The notes under the pieces: model-generated | The model's input: only the letters and a program-made list of their open reading frames with translations | Told to the model about the DNA's origin: nothing | Databases searched by the model: none | Part shown: piece by piece, positions 197-23,354 of the stretch | Numbering within the stretch: the first letter of the stretch is position 1 | How the letters are laid out: each line of letters starts with the position of its first letter | Position numbers and translations under genes: made by a program | Assembly (NCBI RefSeq): GCF_006345805.1 | Contig: NW_021836500.1 | Span: 1-23,911 of the forward strand | From: Octopus sinensis | Lineage: Eukaryota | Length of the DNA: 23,911 nucleotides | Direction of reading: 5' to 3'

Positions 197-254
197 ATGA
201 CACGTTTCGTTTCTCGTGGTGCAAAAATAAAACTATCAAAACTCAAAATCTTCT

Positions 255-1360
255 GTGTCTCAAGAGCTTGAACGCAAAGATGAAATCCGTATCAAGATGA
301 GGAGGGGTCACACTCCTCTCAATCTCTTTGAACAATCCAACTGTACTGAGTCTCTTGTCCTCTTCGCGTCTGATAAAAAATTATGCGATTGGACGAATAA
401 AGTCTTTAATATTCTAACCAAATCCGAGACTGCACAGAAGGCCCGAATTACTGCCAGGAAGTCTGGGGACTTTACCCTCGAATTCTCAAATTCTAGTGAT
501 AGGGACTCGTTTGTGAATGACTTCGAGTATAACAAACCATTTGGCCAGGACGGCCATTATATTTCTGCGTGCAGTCTGCAACCATCGACCGTAGTCTTGA
601 AGGGAATACCATCTTGGGTCTCCGAGGAAGACCTGGATCTTTACCTCAAAGAAATTCTCAACCCCGGTTTTACTTTCCAACGGTTCTACAAAAATGGACG
701 GAGTATACCTGTTGGAAAGTTGAGTCTGAATTCGAGGGCAGAAGCCACTTCGCTTGTAAGGATGGGAATCGAAGTGGGATTTCAAAAAATACGATGCGAA
801 TGGTTTAAAAACCCAGCAACTAGATGCTTTCGCTGCCAACAATTTGGTCACATTGCTAACTTCTGCAAAGAAGTGGAAAGATGTCTTTTCTGTGGTGGTG
901 ATCATAATATGAAAATGTGCCCGATTAAAGGAAAAACTGAGAAAAAATTTATAACTGCGGTCTGAGTGGGCATTTGGCTTGCTACGGTGGCTGCTCTTCA
1001 GCTAAGGCAGCCACTGAACAACTAAAAAAGCAGCTCAGTGCCAGGGACAGACTGGCCAAAGCAGAACACTCAAAAACTGTATGGTCAAAAGCGGAGGCCG
1101 TTGAATCTGTATGGCGAAAACCCACAATTTCCCGCTGTTTTGACTCCTCAACCGCAAACAGATGTTAGTGAAGACGCAACTTTGCCTCCCAATACACACA
1201 CACAGAGCCTCCAACCCGCTTTAAGAGGAAAGCACCAACTATCGACGTTGAGCTTACCTCTATGATTCGCAAAATAATCGCTATATGCGATGAAAAAGGC
1301 CTCGATATCAACAATCTGTTGTCCCTTTCTCTTGGAAGGGAAAGGATTGATCAGGCGTGA
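255..1360 (+). pseudogene. LINE ORF1 (gag-like nucleic-acid-binding protein), frameshifted
   Basis: Knuckles CFRCQQFGHIANFC and CLFCGGDHNMKMC. A third knuckle (YNCGLSGHLACYGGC) lies in another frame after the A-run near 945. Further frameshifts follow; the last piece ends in TGA at 1358-1360, overlapping the ORF2 start. Confidence 0.85.
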
Positions 1361-3981
1361 GCCCCTTTCTGTCTATTATCGCTGTGAACGCACGTTCTCT
1401 AAAGAGAAGGCGTTCAGAGATTGAGGATATGTTATCCCATAACCCCGTGGACCTTTTGATCGTAAACGAAACAAAAATCAAAAAACATGATGATTACTAC
1501 TTGGATGGCTATCGTTCCCTTGATATTAAGTGGAAGCCGGGCTCGATCGCTGGAACAGGCACTTCTATCTACTACAAATCAACTCTAAGGGTGAAAAATC
1601 TAAAAATTGTGTCCGAGGAATTGTGTGAATTCCTCACAATCGACGTCCTTCTGGAAAAAGGGTGGGTAACAATCGGAGGGATGTACTCAAAATCCCTTTC
1701 CAATTATTCATCGCTTATCAAGGACTTTTTTGCCGATAAACACAATCATTTGTCAATACTCCTCGGGGATCTAAATGCCAAATGCACATCTTTTGGCTGT
1801 CTGAGAACCAACAGGGATGGCATCATTCTTAAGAAGCTTTCAGAATCTCTCAGTTTCTCGGTCATCACATCAAACCCCAAATCATCATTACTCACCAGGA
1901 GGGTGGGACTATTTGGGCGTAGCATTGGTCTCTATGTCTACTCTTCAATTTATGGAACAACCGTACACCTTAAATGATATTGGAAGTGACCATCTACCAA
2001 TTTTATACAAACTCAACCTTGGACCTTTAAAGGGTAAACCAACTTTTATACGATATAACCTCTCGACTATAAACTGGGAACACTACCGAAAATGTTTTAC
2101 ACTTTATCTGAGCAATTTCGCTCCTAAACTTGACGAAAATTCTTCATCTGAGGACCTCGAGAAGTCTAGCAATTCCCTTATTGGATACATAAAGTCTTAT
2201 CTGGAAACATATTCTACAAAATCGTCTCAAACAATAGGAAAACTCACATGCCAAACATGAATGTTGAAATCCTACTAAGGAAAAAACAATGTCTAAGGAA
2301 ACAAACTCCCGGCGCTGCGCAGATTTTCGTGACCGGTCCGTTTTGGAAAGTGAAATCTTCACCATTACGGAAGAAATAAGAAATCGGCGAAGGTGGCGAA
2401 GGATAAAAAATGAATACTGAGTGCAAAAAGCTACATAAAGGAAGTCCAAATTTTTGGAAGGTCTACTCGAAATTAACCTCGACGTCTGAGAAAACTATAC
2501 CTAAACTGCTAAAACAAGATGGATCCCCTGCATCTCATGAAGAAATCCCGAACATATTTGCTGATAGTCTCAAAAGAACAAGAAGTCAATCCGGATACAA
2601 ATCTATCTGATTCAGCTTTGTTTGATATGGAAAAAGAGTTGGAAGACAATCTTAGCTCATTACCAATGTGCTCGGAATCTATAACGTGCAAAGACGTGGA
2701 AAATGCAGTTAGATACTCCAAAAATAACGCTCCGGGAAAGGACAAGATAACCATGCGCATGTTCAAAGAAGCTCCCAAGCAACTTTACGAATATTGGGAT
2801 GTCTCTTCTCCCGCAGTGTGAGCTGGGATACGTCCCTTCTTCATGGAAACTGACGGAGGTAAGGATGATACGGAAGCCTGGAAAACCTGGTTACTTGGCG
2901 ACAAGTTATAGGCCTATAAGCCTAATTCCTACCATCAGTCGAATAATGGAAAGGGTAATGTTTGAACGACTCTCTGAACACGTCGAGAGAAATGGTTATC
3001 TCAAAGACGTGCAGTGGGGCTTTCGGAGGGGTCGTTCCTGTGCTGACTGTCTTTATACACTCAATTCGTCGATTGTAAAGGCTCTGGATTTCAAAGAGTG
3101 TCTGACAATTGTGTCTCTAGACATCTCAAAAGCCTTTGATATGGTTTGGCACCTCGGTCTCCTTAGACATCTGGCGAAGTGTCACATAGACAAAGGACTA
3201 TTCCTATGGCTAAAAGACTTCCTCCGCGACAGGCGCTCTGTGATAAGCTTTCTGAACTATGACTCGGATGAACTGAAACTTAAAAGAGGCGTCCCTCAAG
3301 GATCAGTCCTCAGTCCTCTATTATTCAACATTGTGATGAGCAATCTGCCGTCTCCTGTCAACACACGGACGGAAATTTTGATATACGCCGATGATGTTGT
3401 AATCCTTGACATTTCATCGAAACCTGCCTTATCCGAACAAAGGATTATATCATTATGAATACAGTGGAGCAATGGTGCGATGAAAATATGTTCATTATTG
3501 CGCGTGAGAAGTCCGCATTACTGAGAATCACAGAAAGCAGAAATTTAATAAATTAACCGTGCCTGATCAAGAACATACCTCGACAAAACTCAATTAAATA
3601 TCTTGGCTTGTTCATCGATGAAAAGGGAAACTATCTCGAAAACGCAAAATTAAGTAAAAGGAAAGCAACTAATGCTCTGTTCTGCCTGAGGAAGTTAAAT
3701 TTGGAGCCTGATACTTTCCTCTACGTTTTCAATACGGTGATCCTACCGGGACTACTATACGGAAAAGAGGGATGGTACTTCTCTAAAAAGAAGGACACCA
3801 TCTTAACTAATTTGAAAAGTCTCGCAGGCTCGCTTTGAAGCTTGCTTACCACCAAAAAGTTGAAGATCCAATCCCCCTGTGGCTTGAAAGTAAATCCTCC
3901 ATGGTCGGTGAAACTGTCAAAAAAGCTATAAGTGGTTATAAATCCAACTCAATTGTCACTGGGACGTACCTGCAGAGGTAG
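1357..3981 (+). pseudogene. LINE ORF2 (APE endonuclease + reverse transcriptase), multiply frameshifted
   Basis: APE motifs AVNARSL, LIVNETK, LGDLNAK, GSDHLP. RT motifs YRPISL, QWGFRRGRS, LDISKAFD, GVPQGSVLSPLLF, YADD. Motifs are spread over several reading frames. Confidence 0.92.
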
Positions 3982-4154: not shown

Positions 4155-4205
4155 CAATTTATAGATTTTTTGATTGATCGGATCTAGAAATTGAGTGGCG
4201 GTCGC

Positions 4206-4287
4206 GCTCGCTGCGCTCGGTCGCTCGCTGCGCTCGGTCGCTCGCTGCGCTCGGTCGCTCGCTGCGCTCGGTCGCTCGCTGCGCTCG
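4206..4287. repeat. GC-rich 17-bp tandem repeat (GCTCGCTGCGCTCGGTC) x4.8
   Basis: Four perfect units plus 14 bp, bracketed by the inverted hexamer GTCGCG (4201-4206) / CGCGAC (4286-4291). Confidence 0.95.
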
Positions 4288-4299
4288 CGACATAATAGA

Positions 4300-4590
4300 A
4301 TTAGGTTTATCTCCAAACATCATCTGCATAACTGCCACACGATCAGAACCCGCTATGTTCTAGTCATCAAATTGTATAATGACGGTGTACTGCAAACCTC
4401 AGACTATGTGTCGACAAGTGCATGGTAGGTATAATATAAAAATTACCGGCAAGTGTGATGTTTTTCTCAGTCGTCTTCGTCTCTTGGAAAAGGCAGACAC
4501 TGACATGGTGATTCCAGAGATCCCGTGCAAGTTGGTGCTGCTTGTAAATGAATTTCAGTCATCTTGTGTTATAAGCTCCAAAGTGAAAAC
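4300..4590 (-). mobile_element. Degenerate APE endonuclease N-terminus of an RTE-like LINE
   Basis: Minus-strand translation FGAYNTR*LKFIYKQHQLARDL...VSVCLFQETK...LRFAVH, then SDRVAVMQ after a frameshift. Resembles the RTE-type APE N-terminus. Confidence 0.65.
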
Positions 4591-12768: not shown

Positions 12769-14968
12769 TAACATTGGGGATTTATTAGAATAAGAAATCA
12801 ATTAATCTAATGTACATGTATGTAAAGAAGAACTGATGGCGATCCTGTTTCCCCTCACTATTGCTTGGGACACGTTCTGGAGCCCGAGGCATTCAGCTCT
12901 CAACGACGTTATAAGAAGAGGTCTCGATTCAATCGGATTCCCATCAGTGCTGGAACCACCTGGATTGGACCGAGGAGATGGAAAACGCCCAGACGGGATG
13001 ACTATCTTTCCGTTTTTGGAAGGAAAGCCTCTCGTATGGGATTCAACATGTTCCGACTCCTTGTCCAAGACAAACATGTTGGAAAATGCCTTCAATGCCG
13101 GCACAGCTGCGGATAAAGCAGAGGACATCAAGAAGAAGAAATATAATGTCACAGTCGGATAAATGGACACGCGAATAAATGGACACTTTCAAAATTTCCA
13201 CATCCAAAAAATGATGATTGTTTTGCATATTCAGATTTAAAAAAATTTACTCTTTATTTCCTAGAATCACCTTTCTAGAAACGCCTATCATAAATTGATT
13301 TGTATAGATTTTTTGTTAAAAAAATTTGGCAAGTGGAAATTTCAGAAATACAATCTCCTTGCAAATTAATTGTCGATTCTCTATGAAACAGAAATAAATA
13401 TTGTTATCGCAGTCTTTATTTCAGATATCTGGACCATCATTGAGATATCCCCTCTGGTATTTACACTGTTTATAAGCTACTAGGTAGAATTGTGTTTTAA
13501 TTAAAATTATCTTAATTTTTAGTTACCCAATTATTAATAGAAAACATAATAAATTGTGGCACGTGTGAGCACTCTTTTGACATACCTTGTTGTCCTGTTG
13601 CATTATTTGGTCAATCTTTATTTTTTTATTTAATTGGATTAGAAGGAATATTTTGCGATGTAGTTTCTTTTAATTAATAAATTATCTGAAATTTCATCAT
13701 TTTGTAATATTTGCGAGTTTATTCTTTCAATCTGTTTATATTGCTTATTTGAAATCTTCTCATTTATCTTTATTCATCGAATTTCACCTTATTTTTTGAT
13801 AGAAAGTTCTATTCTTTATATTCTTATGGCAAACTTTTATTTATTTGTTCCCGGATTTGGCGATCTTTTATTTTAGCGCCCTAAAATCTAAAATGATCAA
13901 TTTCTACCAAATTTTAATCATTATTGGAATGATACTTTTTGGATTACTCAACAAAATTTCGGAATGATACTTTTTTATTATATAAATTTTTTCCCTTCAG
14001 AACTTGCAAAATTCGGGGGTGATCGAGAGGACTAATATTTGTTATAAACGAGAGGATAGTATTAGCTCTCGGGACCATAGTTTTGACACGATTCTTAACG
14101 ATCGCAAATTCTTCAGTTGTCAAATGGGGGTGAAAACGCATCCTTTTCCTCAGTCGCATCAAAATCTCGTCGTAAATTGATTTTGGCCTGGCGTGTCTCT
14201 TCAGCCCGGTCCATGGACCTCTTGAAGATCTTCAGTGCGTAGACTCCCTTGTTCATTACGTTTTTGGCTTCGTTACTGTGTGTCGGCGTGTACACACGTT
14301 GCGCAACCTCATTTATTCGGGCTTTGGAAGCAGTTGGCGACTTGGATAGGAGGTTAAATCTCTTGATCTTTCCAAGTGCCGGGTTTTCGATACTCAGAGA
14401 ATATGTGAGGCTTGAGCTGTTAGGCTCAGTTGTCGTCTGATGGGATTGGGTCTCACTGTGTTTTTGAAGCACAGTAGGGTTCGGAAGTTCGGTGGGATAT
14501 TTAGCTTTGATGGGTTCGCAAAAGGGCTGGGGCTTTACCGCTGTTCGTCTAATGTGTTTTCTTCTTGGTTTTCTTTGATTTTTTTGATTTTTTCAATAAT
14601 TTCTTTGCTGAGCTTCACAATACGCATAGTTCCACGCTTTTTTTATAAATTAAAAAGTAGAATATTTCTCTAAAATATTTAACTAATTGTTAATATTGAT
14701 GTATAAAATAACTATTTATATATTTTTTAAATATTTTTAAGCCAGGTGTTTATTTATTCGCTTGTCCATTTATCCGACTGTGACATATAATGGGCTCACC
14801 GATCGTTACGTTTTCCGGCCGGTTGCTGTCGAAACCCTGGGATCGATTGGGAAGGAGTCGTTGTGCTTCCTCAAGTGTATTGGACGTCTCAAGACCTTGA
14901 GAACACACAATCCTCTGGAGACGAGATGGCTCCTCCAGAACGTGTCCCAAGCAATAGTGGGGGGAAAC
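12769..14968. mobile_element. 5'-truncated, 5'-inverted CRE-like retrotransposon insertion (about 556 bp before the nested insert)
   Basis: 13-bp TSD ATTATGAAGAAAT at 12756-12768 and 14969-14981. The true 3' end (LQNVSQAIVRGN..stop..AATAAA) is on - at 12769-12882. The inverted RLE part on + reads SPRHSALNDVI..GLDRGDGKRPDG..KKYN|GLTDRYVFRPVAVETLG. Confidence 0.85.
13147..14785. mobile_element. TIR element with TGT...ACA ends and 5-bp TSD (Ginger-like, apparently non-autonomous)
   Basis: 34-bp TIRs with one mismatch (13147-13180 / 14752-14785). TSD TATAA at 13142-13146 and 14786-14790. Removing the element restores the CRE frame KKKKYNGLTDRY. Confidence 0.85.
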
Positions 14969-16520: not shown

Positions 16521-17522
16521 AAATCGACAGTGAGAAAACTTGATTATCAAAGACCGATCCCTAAACTGGAGTCTCTGCTCCGCGTATGGGCATATGGAAT
16601 GTCTAATTAATAGACTTTTAAAGTCTTTTTGGCTTTATTCCTGCTCGGATTATTTTGGCTGGCAATTCTGATGTCACTTTTGTTAAATTAATTGTGTGAC
16701 ATTCACTTTTAGGGGATAGAACTCTACATACTTAAAAAGGAAATAGAAAAATAAGATCAATTAAACAAACAAAGTGTACACGACTGTATCCCCTTTATTT
16801 GAATTATATTTCAAAACTTGTCCTAGGACTGAATGTCAAATCGGGATATGCCAAAAGAGTTCATAAAACAAACTCTTAAAATGAAAAGAAAAATTTAAAA
16901 ATAATCTAAGGATAATTTAGCGGACATCTGTGCTTGTAAAGTCCGACCATTGCATGGTCCAAACCAAGGTCTTCTGATTGTAGCAAAGCAACCCGGATTG
17001 TTTTGGTAAGAAAGATATTGAAGATCCTTTTGGTTTATCGTGTTTACGCAAGAGACACCAAAAAAATATTGGAAACAAGTTAAATTTAAATTTTGTTTAC
17101 TCCTCTTCTACAATGCCTAAAACAGGTTTCTATCACTAAGCGAATTTCTTCTATTGTTAATCTTCATTGGATGGAAAATTATTCCGCAAATTATGTATTT
17201 TCCATTTTGCTCTGCCAGAAAGTTAATTTTTTTGTTCATTTCGTAATTATAAATAATATAAAAGCAAAAAATTTATAAACTATCTGAGATATCAAATTAT
17301 ACAATCCAATTTGCTGAAGGAGAGACGGGATTGTATTAAAAGAAAAGGCTCATCATCATTTAGACCAGGGGTCGGCAAAAGCAGGCTCGCGAGCCTTTGA
17401 AGGCTCTTTAACTCTTACGGTAGGCTCTTTCAATTTTTAACTATTTTTTTGTGTTGTTAATAACAAAAAATCTTTGCACGTTTAACATTAATTTTTTGTG
17501 GTACATCGATATATGCCTAGCA

Positions 17523-17590
17523 CGGGGGTGTCAAAGATACGGCCCCCGGGCCAGAGCTGGCCCGCGGACGATCTCAAATGGCCCGCGGTA
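17523..17590 (+). mobile_element. Second, different hAT left end nested inside the 17366 element
   Basis: CGGGGGTGTCAAAGATACGGCCCCCGGGCCAGAGCTGGCCCGCGG resembles Charlie-type CAGGGGTGTCAAA ends with GGCCCGC repeats. Preceded by GCCTAGCA (central TA). Confidence 0.7.
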
Positions 17591-17709
17591 AAAGTTTAAA
17601 AGTGTATTTAAAATCTAAAATTATTATTTAACACCAAATAAAAATACAAGAATCTAGATTCTAGAATATAAATAAAAATAAAAAAATTATTGCTCATGAA
17701 TACAATAAT

Positions 17710-19151
17710 TTGATGGGAAAAATTAGAAAAGAGAAGTACGATGCACTACTTGCATGTTTCGATAATGCGCGACATTTTCAATCAAACTGGACTGAAACTT
17801 TTGCATTCACGTCTAATTCAGAACAACTACCGAAATGTCTCATTTGCCAGGAAACTTTGAATCAAAATAAAAAGTCAAATTTAGAGAGACACTTTAACAC
17901 AAAACACTCAAATTTCGCCAAAAAATATCCAATTGGTGATTCCCAAAAGAAAGCTGTAGAAGAACTTACAAAGAATATTCAATTCGAGAATTCTGCTTTT
18001 AAATGTTGGTCTGACAATGCCAGGACTGCAAATATTGCCAGTTTTTTGATAAGCCAAGAGATCGCAAAAAGGGGAAAACCATTTACCGATGTGGAATTTA
18101 TAAAGGCATGTTTCATTAAAACCTCTGAAGAACTTTTTCACGATTTTTCAAATAAGGCAGAAATCGTGAATAAGATAATGAATATACCTTTATTCGCGAA
18201 AATAGTAGCCGACAGGACTTTTAAGATGTCTTCGAATGTATCTGTTCAACAAGTTTCTGACATGAAATTGTCTAATTCAATTTCAATAGCAATAGATGAA
18301 TCATGTGATATAAATGACATTGCACAAGTATCATTGTTCATGTCATACTTAGGTGTCTCTGTTTGTTCGTTATGTGTCTCGAGGTTTCCTGAGGCAAGAA
18401 CTTTTGGCATTATTGCCTCTAAAGGGTCAAACCCGTGGTGAAGATCTTGTTGGCGCAGTCGTAGAATATTTTGAAACGAATTATATTCCTCTTAATAAAA
18501 TCGTTTCAATTTCAACTGACGGTGCTGAAAGCATGCTGGGATCGAGAAAGGGATTTATAACTTTAATTAAAATAAGAATTGATCATGAAGTGATTACTCT
18601 ACATTGTATTATCCACCAAGAAGCACTATCTGCGCAAACGTTTAAGGATTTTAGAAAAGAAAAAGCAACACTATCGTTCGTTATAAACCCTCTACGTGCT
18701 AAAGTCAGCAATTTAAATTTATTGCCATTTGAAATCAACGCAGCTGAGTTCGAAATGCAGCTATTGGACTTGACATGTAAGGAATTATGGGCATCAAAAT
18801 TTATTCGCCTTTCAGAATTACTTGAAACCTTGGAACAGAAACATTGTCTGGTAAAATTAAAAATGATATTAATGTTATACAAAAGAAACTTGAAGATGTG
18901 ATTCTCGAAACTTGGAATTCTCTTCCAGATTCTTATTATGAATTAAAAAAATTTGCATACGGAATTTTGACAATATTCGGGTCCACTTATATGTGTGAAC
19001 AAAGTTTTCTCATATGAATTATATAAAATTGAAATATAGGAACAAAATTACAGATTCGAATTTGGAATCTAACCTCAGATTAAAATTAACGACTTGCGAC
19101 CCAGACATTAACCAACTCTCCAAAGAAATGAGGAATCACATTTCTCATTAA
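17710..19151 (+). pseudogene. hAT transposase, deleted and frameshifted, with a 25-nt intron (18328-18352)
   Basis: BED finger CLIC...LERHFNTKH; AIDESCD; ISTDGAESM; HCIIHQEAL; STYMCEQSF. A large deletion follows HQEAL. Frameshifts near 18860 and 19005. Confidence 0.88.
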
Positions 19152-19729
19152 TGCGTCTAATTAATTTAATTTTTTAAAATGAATTTTTAATTATTTTTTA
19201 AATTAATGTTTATTTAATTTTATGAATTTCTCAAATCAATCTCTTCTCTGAATTTATTAACTGACATTATTAATAATGAAAATATTGAATTTAAATTTTT
19301 GACAAGTGGTAAAAGGTGGCTCTTCAATTTTTCGAAATTTCCAAAAATGTTCAAAATTGGCTCTTCTCCAAAAGTATTTGCCGACCCCTGATTTAGACTA
19401 ATAGAATCCTTGAAGGATCGATGTATCCAATATGCACCAGGATTGACGACTGACGCCGTTATCAGTGTTATCGCTGCGGAATCGGATGTCTTAATCGGCC
19501 ACACAACAAAAAATGGGGAGGGGTAACAAGATGAAGCAGAAGAGACACATGACTTTATTTTGATTAGTTAGTTCCTTGGTAACGTGTTCTCTTTCTGTCT
19601 TGTTCTTTTTATAAAAAAAGTGTGCCCGGCCTGGGCGACATGTCAATATTCGCGGAAGGGATATTTACGATTTTTACGCAACTCCTTGCCGGATCAACTA
19701 TTTTTTTAAGACAAGTGAAATTCTTTTGC

Positions 19730-20200
19730 ATGTATTCGTTGTGGAAGAAGATGAACAGAGAGGATATTTGTTGTAAATGTTCACCTTGAAAATGGACATC
19801 TTTATCTTTATAGGTTTCTTCTCTTTTAAAGAATTTAGTCTATGAATCTCGCAGAGATGAAGTTATGATTGTGCTCAGGTCTTGTCCACAATGTCTTGCT
19901 AGACGACTTAGGAAACTCGATCGAGTATAACACCAATAGAGCATATACAGTGAGAGAAAGATAGTAAGTATGTATTCTAATATCAGATATCTTTTTGATT
20001 GAGTTAATGCACGCCAATATTCAAATTCCAATGGCAACCAAATATGCACTTCTCCTACGAATTCATTGATGTTCGATTTTGTACTACATTAAAGAATCTG
20101 CCGAATATCGATGTGGGACCTGAACGGGAGCAAACAAACCAGCCCAAGTCCAATATTTGTCGACAAATAAACCAATTATTGGGTTGTGACACCCGAATGA
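19730..20200 (+). mobile_element. Second Ginger2/KRBA2-like integrase relic
   Basis: HLENGH...RDEVMIVLRSCPQC (H2C2 zinc finger), ITPI, then ER.YLFD*VNARQYSNSNG and IDV in shifted frames. Confidence 0.6.
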
Positions 20201-22293: not shown

Positions 22294-22459
22294 AAATGGT
22301 TTTTCTTTTTTGCGATCTCGTGGCTTATCAAAAAATTGGTAATATTTGCAGTCCTGGCATTGTGATACCAATATTTAAAAGCGGAATCTCAATCTGATTA
22401 TTCTTTGCAAGTTCTTCTACAGCTTTGTTTCGCAAATCACCAATTGGATATTTTTTTGC
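22294..22459 (-). mobile_element. Fragment of the same hAT transposase family as 17710-19151
   Basis: Reverse complement aligns closely with about 17920-18087 (AAAAAATATCCAATTGGTGAT...GACTGCAAATATT...GAGATCGCAAAAA). Confidence 0.85.
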
Positions 22460-22576: not shown

Positions 22577-23332
22577 CATAGGTTTTCACGAGAAATTTCT
22601 CGCGGCGCAAATGCTAATAAAAAATAATCTCGCGGCACATAATCAAATATCAAAACATAATTCTAAAATTCAAAATTTATTATTTTTACATATTTTTTCT
22701 ATGTCTGGCTCAATATTTGATAAGGCCAGTCGCATTTCTGAATCCAAATCCAGTAGATTTTCTCGCTTATTTGTTTTAATGTTTTGTAATGCAGAAAATC
22801 CCTTTTCACAAAAATAAGTTGTTGCAAATTGTAGAATTATCCGCATTGCTTTATCTGTTATGTTTGGAAATCTAGAACGAATTTTGATCCAAAATTCGCC
22901 AATATTTAATTCCGTATGTGATAATTTTAAGGTACGATCATTAAATAGTTCAATAAGCTCCATATTTTCGAACGGTGATAATTCATTACTATGACTAACC
23001 AAAAATGGATTCCGTATCTAAAACTAATTATTTAAAATAAATACCCAATCATATTTTCCAATGTCTATGTCTATTAATTATATTTTTCAATTGTACGAGG
23101 TTTCATTTTTTAATTCTTTAAAATAATCAATTGAATAATCTTTATATTCCGGGTGCTTAGATGAAAAATGTCTACGAAGTTTAGATGGAACCATTGATTC
23201 ATTCGACAACACCTCCATGCAAATCAGGCACTGTGGTAAACTATTTCCAGTGCCACAACAGTCAAAACCCATAGATAAAAAAGATGATTTGTAATGACGA
23301 ATACTCCGATACACAAACATAACAAATAGCAA
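22577..23332 (-). mobile_element. Buster/ZBED5-like hAT relic, internally deleted, with a 27-nt intron (23018-23044)
   Basis: BED finger PQCLICMEVLSNESMVPSKLRRHFSSKH. YDW|IRNPF after splicing. Dimerisation region FWI...FATTYFCEKGFSAL. Degenerate end near 22577 preceded by ATCTAGTC. Confidence 0.85.
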
Positions 23333-23354
23333 CGTGATTATAATTTATTATAAT

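What the first reader, a model, noticed from the sequence alone, without database searches (positions are those of the whole stretch)
18328..18352. Candidate intron birth by tandem duplication inside a hAT transposase
The 25-nt segment GTATCATTGTTCATGTCATACTTAG has GT..AG ends, and removing it joins the 17710 and 18353 ORFs in frame (DIAQ|VSLFVRYV). Read through, it encodes VSLFMSYL, a near copy of the VSLFVRYV that follows, with only synonymous differences in the first four codons. This is what intron gain by duplication of exonic sequence would leave. It is plausible only where about 25 nt is a normal intron size. The alternative is an out-of-register recombination junction between two related transposases, consistent with the double left end.
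Basis: partly seen in the sequence, partly recalled or inferred. Interest (0 to 1): 0.82.

Follow-up and report, generated by a model that had tools for sequence, protein, structure and literature searches.

The report
Ultra-short intron in parasite transposon
The 25-base GT..AG segment is most likely a real, newly gained mini-intron in a hAT transposon gene, because this scaffold comes not from the octopus but from a co-assembled parasite-type genome (probably a dicyemid) whose normal introns are 24-30 bases long.

Summary
18328-18352 is GT..AG, and removing it joins the two ORFs into DIAQ|VSLFVRYV with no gap against ten intact relatives.

The context changes the verdict. The window is an unplaced scaffold of the Octopus sinensis assembly. 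Three of its transposon families occur only on unplaced contigs. Actin and tubulin genes on those contigs, two of which also carry this hAT family, have 24-34-nt introns (median 27, n=26). That is the dicyemid hallmark, so 25 nt is a normal intron size here.

Every copy that spans the site carries the segment, including copies 14-23% diverged. The majority consensus of the young copies reads as one 454-aa ORF only if this segment and a second GT..AG segment (18851-18885, 35 nt) are removed. The master lineage kept conserved residues on both sides (211 losses in old copies against 19) and shows excess synonymous change (p=0.001). The gene was therefore selected while carrying the segment.

A duplication origin is plausible but not clean. 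The resemblance to the next exon is codon-structured, not that of a drifting copy. The "double left end" is a private insertion from another hAT family and is unrelated. No RNA evidence could be obtained.

The parts
17358..17365 (+). Left target-site duplication ATTTAGAC
   Evidence: the same 8 bp recur at 19391-19398.
17366..17379 (+). True 5' terminal inverted repeat of the family (CAGGGGTCGGCAAA)
   Evidence: Its reverse complement ends the element at 19377-19390. Homology among copies runs upstream of 17521.
17513..17521 (+). Start of the family ORF (ATG CCT AGC = MPS)
   Evidence: In typical copies it continues AAG AAA AAA ATT AAT AAA AAA ATC GAT AAT..., in frame with exon 1.
17522..17759 (+). 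Private insert: fragment of an unrelated hAT family (left end ..CGGGGGTGTCAAAGATACGGCCC plus part of its ORF). It replaces 22 nt of the typical copy.
   Evidence: only the window copy and L020 (C8698:402580) carry it. L075 and L076 show the donor family with a different transposase.
17760..18327 (+). Exon 1 of the transposase gene: zinc-finger region up to DESCDINDIAQ
   Evidence: 58-63% identical to intact relatives.
18328..18352 (+). Intron 1 (the finding): 25 nt, GT..AG, phase 0. Read in frame it mimics the first 8 codons of exon 2.
18353..18850 (+). Exon 2 (VSLFVRYV...LEQKHCL). It contains the in-frame internal deletion junction of about 185 aa near 18640-18644 (SAQTF|KDFRKE).
   Evidence: the older copy L066 retains most of the deleted region.
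18851..18885 (+). Candidate intron 2: 35 nt, GTAAAATT..CAAAAG. Its removal joins HCL|KLEDVILETWNS in frame.
   Evidence: the spliced product lacks 14 aa present in relatives, and the read-through frame matches none of the conserved SQHKWSALKDL.
18886..19151 (+). Exon 3: hAT C-terminal dimerisation region, stop TAA at 19149-19151. This copy has a private 1-nt deletion in the T run at 19005-19008.
   Evidence: PF05699; most other copies have TTTTT (11 of the 15 aligned; 5 of 8 in the pile-up).
19377..19390 (+). 3' terminal inverted repeat (TTTGCCGACCCCTG)
   Evidence: all copies end here and their flanks diverge beyond it.
19391..19398 (+). Right target-site duplication ATTTAGAC

Best explanation
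The window is not octopus DNA proper. It is a scaffold of a second animal genome co-assembled with Octopus sinensis, most likely a dicyemid kidney parasite, whose spliceosomal introns are 24-30 nt long.

In that genome lives a hAT (GTF2IRD2/Charlie-like) transposon family. Its transposase gene carries two lineage-specific ultra-short GT-AG introns: 18328-18352 (25 nt, phase 0) and 18851-18885 (35 nt). The 25-nt segment is removed by the ordinary spliceosome, restoring ...DINDIAQ|VSLFVRYV..., the beta-strand that follows the DESCD motif.

Shown:
- the segment's sequence and ends;
- its presence in all copies;
- the normal intron size in this genome;
- that the consensus ORF is open only when both segments are removed;
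- slower, synonymous-biased evolution of the master lineage on both sides of the segment.

Inferred:
- that it is actually spliced;
- that the host is a dicyemid.

The intron derives from sequence homologous to the first eight codons of the next exon. This could be a 25-nt tandem duplication or an out-of-register join between diverged copies. I cannot tell which.

The window copy itself is a dead, non-autonomous derivative. It has a deletion of about 185 aa, a private foreign insert at its 5' end and a private 1-nt deletion.
For: 1. Host context. The hAT family, the unrelated hAT left end and the LINE at 231-3838 occur only on unplaced contigs, never on C1-C30.

2. Intron size in that genome.
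- C7755 and C8698 carry copies of this family. They also carry beta- and alpha-tubulin genes with introns of 26-27 and 30 nt.
- Actins on C8460, C12602 and C8911 have 24-34-nt introns. The chromosomal actin on C2 has an intron of about 2.3 kb.
- Over n=26 introns the median is 27 nt.
- Published dicyemid values are 26.2 +/- 1.9 nt (PMC2222250) and median 27 (PMC6543705). Among animals, introns this short are known only from Dicyema and myxobolids (PMC13644364). D. japonicum was collected from O. sinensis (PMC6736024).

3. The splice restores the protein. Removal gives a gapless alignment with ten intact relatives. Their ORFs are uninterrupted: 616-645 aa on contigs of 2.1-3.2 kb.

4. Consensus ORF. 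The majority consensus of young copies with both segments removed is one 454-aa ORF from ATG to the natural stop, without a stop codon. With neither removed it stops at residue 237; with only the 25-nt removed it stops at 382.

5. Age. All old copies carry the segment, including L066, which keeps most of the region deleted in the young subfamily. It therefore predates the deletion derivatives.

6. Selection.
- Master-branch changes are 17 synonymous to 14 non-synonymous. Old copies show 60 to 185 (Fisher p=0.001).
- Residues conserved in outgroups were lost only by the old copy 211 times and only by the master 19 times. The asymmetry holds upstream (67:7), between the two segments (90:5) and downstream (54:7).
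- Young copies are only 2.3% from their consensus, with changes spread evenly over codon positions.

7. Splice-motif score. The segment scores within the range of real introns and above 86% of decoy GT..AG pairs in the ORF.
Against: - No RNA evidence. No spliced or unspliced product of this family is in the protein collections.
- No intact autonomous copy was found in the assembly. The best other hATs are 38% identical or less.
- The splice-motif score is only at the 27th percentile of real introns. The 35-nt candidate is near the bottom of that range.
- Downstream of the 25 nt, the synonymous excess alone is marginal: 8 of 18, p=0.05.
- The relative-rate argument assumes that old copies and the master lineage share a mutation rate, and that parsimony places the segment in their common ancestor.
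- The dicyemid identity rests on intron size, host and literature. No named marker was obtained. The actin is at most 89% identical to anything named, and no parasite COX1 was found.
- The present upstream exon ends CAA rather than CAG, so the classical AG|GT duplication signature is absent.
Confidence: 0.7

Rival explanations
1. The segment is a frameshifting 25-nt insertion (imperfect local duplication or filler DNA) in an already dead element. The dead element was then amplified in trans. It is never spliced, and its intron-like size and ends are coincidence.
For: - The window's subfamily is non-autonomous, with a deletion of about 185 aa.
- Individual copies evolve neutrally.
- No transcript evidence was found.
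- GT..AG pairs 24-30 nt apart are not rare: 22 in this ORF.
- The GT follows automatically from a Val codon.
Against: - The consensus ORF is intact apart from exactly two GT..AG segments.
- The master lineage kept conserved residues downstream of the segment as well as upstream (90:5 and 54:7) and shows a synonymous excess.
- The segment was already present in the full-length progenitor of independently deleted lineages.
- A dead progenitor would have collected stops during the time in which old copies diverged 14-23%.
Confidence: 0.18
2. The segment is an out-of-register junction between two diverged but related transposase genes (template switch or recombination). The left half comes from one parent and the right half from another, and the junction is not an intron.
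For: - The two 8-codon copies differ mostly at third codon positions (matches by position 4/7/1, p=0.0026).
- All four single differences in codons 1-4 are synonymous, as if both had been coding while they diverged.
- Internal deletions and foreign filler do occur in this family.
Against: - Both halves have the same nearest relatives at similar identity: 58-63% and 58-66%.
- No element in the genome carries either half without the junction. No other locus encodes VSLFMSYL.
- The 'double left end' is a private fragment of an unrelated family present in 2 copies.
- The copy inside the segment has Ser where every relative has an invariant Arg.
- An unspliced junction would not explain the selection seen downstream.

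As the origin of a segment that is then spliced, this remains open; I put that at roughly 0.3.
Confidence: 0.08
3. The frame is restored at translation rather than by splicing: a programmed +1 frameshift over ..TAC TTA G GTG.. would give a protein with an 8-residue repeat.
For: The read-through peptide VSLFMSYL is protein-like, and a CTTAGG string is present.
Against: - CTT AGG is not in the zero frame.
- The repeat would double a core beta-strand with an invariant Arg replaced.
- Ordinary 24-30-nt splicing in this genome explains the segment without special machinery.
Confidence: 0.02

Closest known systems
Ultra-short spliceosomal introns of dicyemids (Dicyema acuticephalum, D. japonicum, Dicyema sp.; PMC2222250, PMC6543705, PMC6736024, PMC13644364)
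   Same: GT..AG ends, a length of 25 nt inside the narrow 24-30-nt mode, weak splice-site motifs, and a host genome rich in LINEs at about 33-37% GC. Introns measured here on linked contigs have the same median (27 nt).
   Different: Published dicyemid introns lie mostly at ancient, conserved positions in host genes. This one sits in a transposase gene at a position that is intron-free in all relatives, so it is a gain.
Intron gain by tandem or segmental duplication of exon sequence containing AG|GT (PMC3265369; potato RdRp case PMC4974935)
   Same: The intron is in register with, and resembles, the start of the following exon. It is absent from relatives. A duplicate of intron length would be spliceable at once in a genome with 25-nt introns.
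   Different: The present exon end is CAA|GT, not CAG|GT. Nucleotide identity is only 12/25. The matches are codon-structured, which a neutrally drifting intronic copy does not predict.
hAT-superfamily DNA transposons of the GTF2IRD2 / ZBED / Charlie-like group
   Same: 8-bp TSD, CAGGGG... terminal inverted repeats, BED-like zinc-finger region, DESCD..STDG..CEQ catalytic motifs, and the C-terminal hAT dimerisation domain. It is 58-66% identical to copies in bats, fish, frogs, insects and spiders.
   Different: Relatives are single uninterrupted ORFs. This family has two mini-introns, and the amplified form has an in-frame deletion of about 185 aa.
Splicing-regulated transposons such as the Drosophila P element (retention of intron 3 gives a truncated repressor) and maize Ac (transposase gene with introns). 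This comparison is from general knowledge and was not tested here.
   Same: A DNA transposon whose transposase needs splicing. Retaining intron 1 would give a truncated N-terminal DNA-binding product ending 29 codons after the intron.
   Different: There is no evidence here of regulated retention or of a repressor.

Membership tests
hAT superfamily transposon | 8-bp target-site duplication | tested here: met
   ATTTAGAC at 17358-17365 and at 19391-19398. Other copies have different 8-bp flanks of the nnCTAGnn type.
hAT superfamily transposon | Short terminal inverted repeats | tested here: met
   CAGGGGTCGGCAAA at 17366, with its reverse complement ending at 19390.
hAT superfamily transposon | Transposase with the hAT C-terminal dimerisation domain and homology to known hAT transposases | tested here: met
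   PF05699 scores 25.5 bits against a cut-off of 21.4. There are 189 homologues, the best about 60% identical and named GTF2IRD2, ZBED or 'HAT C-terminal dimerisation domain-containing'.
hAT superfamily transposon | BED-type zinc finger | tested here: inconclusive
   PF02892 scores 17.6 bits (cut-off 20.6) and PF18658 scores 21.9 bits (cut-off 27.3). The CxxC..HxxxxH pattern is visible in the sequence.
hAT superfamily transposon | Autonomy (complete transposase) | tested here: not met
   An in-frame deletion of about 185 aa after SAQTF relative to P0004. This copy also has a foreign 5' insert and a 1-nt deletion.
U2-type GT-AG spliceosomal intron | GT and AG termini | tested here: met
   Both are kept in the consensus and in most copies.
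U2-type GT-AG spliceosomal intron | Length within the host genome's intron-length distribution | tested here: met
   The segment is 25 nt. Real introns on linked contigs are 24-34 nt, median 27, n=26.
U2-type GT-AG spliceosomal intron | Removal restores a continuous, conserved reading frame | tested here: met
   Gapless alignment to ten outgroups. The consensus ORF of 454 aa is open only after removal.
U2-type GT-AG spliceosomal intron | Coding sequence on both sides under purifying selection while the segment is present | tested here: met
   211 against 19 losses of conserved residues, and 17:14 against 60:185 synonymous to non-synonymous changes (p=0.001). This is indirect and depends on parsimony.
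U2-type GT-AG spliceosomal intron | Spliced junction observed in RNA | not testable with these tools
   No read data are available. The protein collections hold no product of this family other than the mis-modelled P0054.
U2-type GT-AG spliceosomal intron | Splice-site and branch-site motifs | tested here: inconclusive
   The PWM score is -1.11, at the 27th percentile of real introns and above 86% of decoys. A TTCAT (YTNAY) motif lies 12 nt before the 3' end. Dicyemid motifs are reported to be weak (PMC13644364).
Intron gain by tandem duplication | Intron absent at the homologous position in relatives | tested here: met
   Other hAT ORFs on the same class of contigs are uninterrupted at 607-621 aa.
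Intron gain by tandem duplication | Intron homologous, in register, to the adjacent exon | tested here: inconclusive
   12/25 nt, p about 0.05. At the peptide level BLOSUM62 = 26, p about 8e-5.
Intron gain by tandem duplication | AG|GT protosplice site at the duplicated boundary | tested here: not met
   The upstream exon ends ..GCACAA|GT in young and old copies. This would require a later synonymous G-to-A change.
Intron gain by tandem duplication | Differences between the copies spread as under neutral drift of the intronic copy | tested here: not met
   Matches by codon position are 4/7/1 of 8, p=0.0026.
Dicyemid (Dicyemida) genome | Uniformly ultra-short introns (about 26-27 nt) in conserved animal genes | tested here: met
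   compared with PMC2222250 and PMC6543705.
Dicyemid (Dicyemida) genome | Association with a cephalopod host while being separate from the host chromosomes | tested here: met
   P0054 is labelled Octopus sinensis and its contig is 23,911 bp long. The three repeat families occur only on unplaced contigs.
Dicyemid (Dicyemida) genome | A marker gene matching a named dicyemid sequence | tested here: inconclusive
   The actin is at most 89% identical to any named protein, and no dicyemid-labelled hit appeared. Only octopus COX1 and nuclear copies of it were found.
Recombinant of two transposase families | Family affinity switches at the junction, and parental families lack the segment | tested here: not met
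   The nearest relatives are the same for both halves. No junction-free copies exist. The second left end is private and from an unrelated family.

The most novel reading that the evidence does not exclude
The intron was created in one step, when 25 nt homologous to the start of the next exon were placed out of register in front of it. It is also not merely spliced out. In transcripts that retain it, translation runs through its protein-like codons (VSLFMSYL) and ends 29 codons later. That would yield a truncated DNA-binding protein acting as a splicing-controlled regulator of transposition, as in the P element. Such translation would explain why the intron's first codons differ from the exon only synonymously.
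Probability: 0.07. Interest if true: 0.8.

Novelty: new member of a known kind. Interest (0 to 1): 0.62.

Why it matters
Documented intron gains in animals are very rare, and the source sequence can seldom still be read. Here a transposase gene that is intron-free in bats, fish, insects and spiders has acquired two mini-introns inside a genome whose spliceosome handles 25-nt introns. One of them still resembles the adjacent exon. If splicing is confirmed, it shows that in such genomes a duplication or misjoin of about 25 nt is enough to make a working intron, and that transposons can record such events in many dated copies.

There is also a practical point. The public Octopus sinensis assembly and its RefSeq annotation appear to contain many contigs of a parasite-type genome. 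At least one gene model there, LOC115232163, is stitched together from transposon pieces.

Tried and rejected
- Octopus intron. Rejected once it was clear that the family and two other repeat families are absent from C1-C30.
- Chimera supported by the double left end. Rejected: 17522-17759 is a private fragment of another hAT family.
- Affinity switch between the halves. None was found.
- Donor search. Exact and 3-mismatch patterns for both segments, and a degenerate back-translation of VSLFMSYL, hit only family copies. One chromosome-2 hit is a chance match with no homology to the element.
- Codon-position counts between single copies. They looked neutral and at first argued against function. 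Polarising the changes with several old lineages and protein outgroups was needed to see the master branch.
- Spliced product in protein collections. None was found. An exact look-up of the unspliced ORF was not on record.
- Naming the organism through actin and COX1. Both were uninformative.
- Third frame break near 19005 as an intron. Rejected: it is a 1-nt deletion seen in only a few copies, including this one.
- The NCBI model P0054, which uses 18353 and 18850 as exon ends. This is not independent evidence, because a TAG stop directly precedes 18353 in that frame and the predictor cannot model 25-nt introns.
- Assembly artefact. Rejected because the segment recurs in 23 or more copies.

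Full report
**The observation**

Positions 18328-18352 read GTATCATTGTTCATGTCATACTTAG, followed by GTGTCTCTGTTTGTTCGTTATGTG. The frame from the left ends ...AIDESCDINDIAQ at 18327. The frame to the right starts VSLFVRYVSRGF at 18353. Removing the 25 nt joins them in phase 0. Read through, the segment gives VSLFMSYL. Its first four codons differ from those of the next exon only synonymously. The description is therefore correct.

**What the element is**

The conceptual protein hits the hAT dimerisation domain above Pfam's cut-off. It also gives weak hits to zinc-finger and DUF4371 models. It has 189 homologues, the best about 60% identical. These are named GTF2IRD2-like, ZBED or hAT proteins and come from bats, fish, frogs, insects and spiders.

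The true ends are CAGGGGTCGGCAAA at 17366 and its reverse complement ending at 19390. Both are flanked by the 8-bp duplication ATTTAGAC.

All other copies share the sequence upstream of 17521. They then read CCTAGCAAGAAAAAAATTAATAAAAAAATCGATAATGCG. That puts an ATG at 17513 in frame with the transposase, giving MPSKKKINKKIDNARHF...

The stretch at about 17522-17759 includes the 'second left end' and the apparent start MGKIRKEKY. It occurs only in this copy and one other. It matches the left end and part of the ORF of a different hAT family. It has nothing to do with the 25 nt.

**Where the window comes from**

One database protein is encoded here: LOC115232163 of Octopus sinensis, on a contig of exactly 23,911 bp. 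The genome is 2.72 Gb in 13,516 contigs.

Three repeat families are found only on unplaced contigs and never on C1-C30:
- this family;
- the unrelated hAT left end;
- the LINE at 231-3838, with 40 copies 99-100% identical.

Actin genes on such contigs are interrupted by gaps of only tens of bases. A chromosomal actin has an intron of about 2.3 kb. Spliced alignment gives the following:
- actin introns of 24, 26, 26 nt; 28, 27, 24/25, 28, 28/29 nt; and 30, 34 nt;
- tubulin introns mostly of 26-30 nt. The greedy aligner also returned a few outliers (17, 21 and 37 nt), which were left out of the 26-intron set.

Two of these tubulin genes lie on C7755 and C8698, contigs that also carry copies of this hAT family with the 25-nt segment.

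Over 26 introns the median is 27 nt. Published values for dicyemids are 26.2 +/- 1.9 nt (PMC2222250) and median 27 (PMC6543705). Among animals, such introns are known only in Dicyema and myxobolid myxozoans (PMC13644364). D. japonicum, whose genome is 36.7% GC and 49% repeats including LINEs, was collected from O. sinensis (PMC6736024).

I infer that the window belongs to a dicyemid-type genome co-assembled with the octopus. I could not obtain a named marker.

**Is the segment an intron?**

Several results bear on this.

- *Size and ends.* Both are those of real introns in this genome. Its weak-motif score lies within their range and above 86% of decoy GT..AG pairs in the ORF.
- *Fit to relatives.* Removal gives a gapless alignment to ten intact relatives. 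Those relatives are uninterrupted ORFs.
- *Presence in all copies.* Every copy spanning the site has it. There are 23 hits to the segment genome-wide at up to 3 mismatches (21 exact), always next to the exon-2 start. Degraded versions occur in old copies 14-23% diverged. One of these, L066, still holds most of the roughly 185-aa region deleted in the young subfamily. The segment therefore predates the deletion derivatives.
- *Consensus ORF.* Take the majority consensus of the young copies. Remove 18328-18352 and a second GT..AG segment, 18851-18885. The result reads as one 454-aa ORF from ATG to the natural stop, with no stop codon. Otherwise it stops at residue 237 or 382. The third frame break in the window, near 19005, is a 1-nt deletion seen in only a few copies.
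- *Selection.* Changes were polarised using several old lineages. The branch leading to the young consensus has 17 synonymous and 14 non-synonymous changes. The old copies have 60 and 185 (Fisher p=0.001).
- *Conserved residues.* At residues conserved in ten outgroups, only the old copy has lost the residue 211 times and only the master 19 times. The same asymmetry holds upstream of the 25 nt (67:7), between the two segments (90:5) and after the second (54:7).
- *Young copies.* They are only 2.3% from their consensus, with changes spread evenly over codon positions. The short, synonymous-biased master branch is therefore not an effect of recent consensus-building.

Together these results indicate that the gene was kept functional while it carried the segment. 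In a genome with 24-30-nt introns, the simplest way for that to happen is splicing. This step is inferred. No RNA data could be consulted, and the protein collections hold no product of the family.

**The second segment**

Removing 18851-18885 joins HCL|KLEDVILETWNS in frame. This leaves a 14-residue gap against relatives. The alternative is a 1-nt shift with read-through, but that reading matches none of the conserved SQHKWSALKDL residues. Elsewhere the consensus matches 256 of 340 conserved positions. I read the segment as a second, longer mini-intron that replaced or was carved out of coding sequence. Its motif score is poor.

**Origin of the 25 nt**

The resemblance to the next exon is weak at nucleotide level: 12/25, p about 0.05. 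It is still higher than for any of the 16 putative tubulin introns. At peptide level it is strong, with p about 8e-5.

The matches sit at second codon positions (7/8) and avoid third positions (1/8), p=0.0026. A tandem copy drifting neutrally as an intron should not show this pattern. The present exon end is CAA|GT in all copies, so the AG|GT signature of the classical model (PMC3265369, PMC4974935) is missing.

An out-of-register join between two diverged coding copies would fit the codon pattern. However:
- both halves have the same nearest relatives;
- no junction-free parent or other VSLFMSYL-coding locus exists in the assembly;
- the intronic copy has Ser where all relatives have an invariant Arg.

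I conclude that the intron is probably homologous to the exon start. The mechanism remains open.

**Verdict**

The 25 nt is most likely a real, lineage-specific mini-intron. Its birth from exon-like sequence is plausible but unproven. The recombination alternative is not supported as a non-spliced explanation, and the double left end is irrelevant. The window copy itself is a dead derivative.

Noticed in passing
whole window; G000 contigs C7755, C8698, C8460, C12602, C8911, C8702, C1794 and others: The Octopus sinensis assembly seems to contain many unplaced contigs, up to more than 1 Mb, of a second animal genome with 24-30-nt introns, probably a dicyemid parasite. Three repeat families of the window are confined to these contigs. 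I found no paper reporting this.
   Followed up: partly
window 12998-13153, about 13998-14177, 18353-18850, 19814-19927: The NCBI gene model LOC115232163 (P0054, 313 aa) is stitched from a retrotransposon-like ORF, an unrelated piece, the middle exon of the hAT gene and a downstream piece. Its exon 3 uses exactly the two mini-intron borders. It is probably an artefact of annotating a tiny-intron genome with octopus parameters.
   Followed up: partly
window 231-3838 (+): A non-LTR retrotransposon with a CCHC gag-like ORF, an endonuclease and a reverse transcriptase. At least 40 copies are 99-100% identical, all on unplaced contigs. ORF2 in this copy is split over several frames. That is odd for so young a family and may reflect indel errors in low-coverage contigs.
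   Followed up: no
window 17522-17759; L075 (C11397), L076 (C12604): The fragment comes from a second hAT family (left end ..CGGGGGTGTCAAAGATACGGCCCCCGGGCC). In the window it is 262 nt shorter than in the donor copies. It replaces 22 nt at the 5' end of the ORF in just two copies, so it looks like filler from template switching during repair.
   Followed up: yes
window 22300-22459 (-), 22670-23017 (-), 23087-23344 (-): A further fragment of the same hAT family lies in inverted orientation, 81-89% identical to 17917-18077. Next to it are the zinc-finger and C-terminal parts of yet another hAT-like ORF.
   Followed up: no
L029 and L030 (C1794:465579, C10696:64651), equivalent to window about 18360-18470: Two copies repeat ATTGTTCATGTCAT after the exon-2 start and then jump to about 18470. 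This is a rearrangement at the TTGTTC microhomology shared by the intron and the exon.
   Followed up: no
window 4188-4306: A tandem array of a GC-rich 17-nt unit (CGCTCGCTGCGCTCGGT), about six copies, downstream of the LINE.
   Followed up: no
transposase relatives: The nearest intact relatives (58-66% aa) are scattered over bats, a bichir, frogs, beetles, aphids and spiders. No close mollusc copy was seen. This patchy spread suggests horizontal transfer of this hAT lineage.
   Followed up: no
L061 and L062 (C9300:117600-119900, C10777:27000-29300), at the point equivalent to window 18289: In one old subfamily, the end of another CAGGGGTGTCAAACATGCGGCCCGCGGGCC-type element abuts the internal sequence just upstream of the intron. 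This is a nested insertion or a truncation.
   Followed up: no
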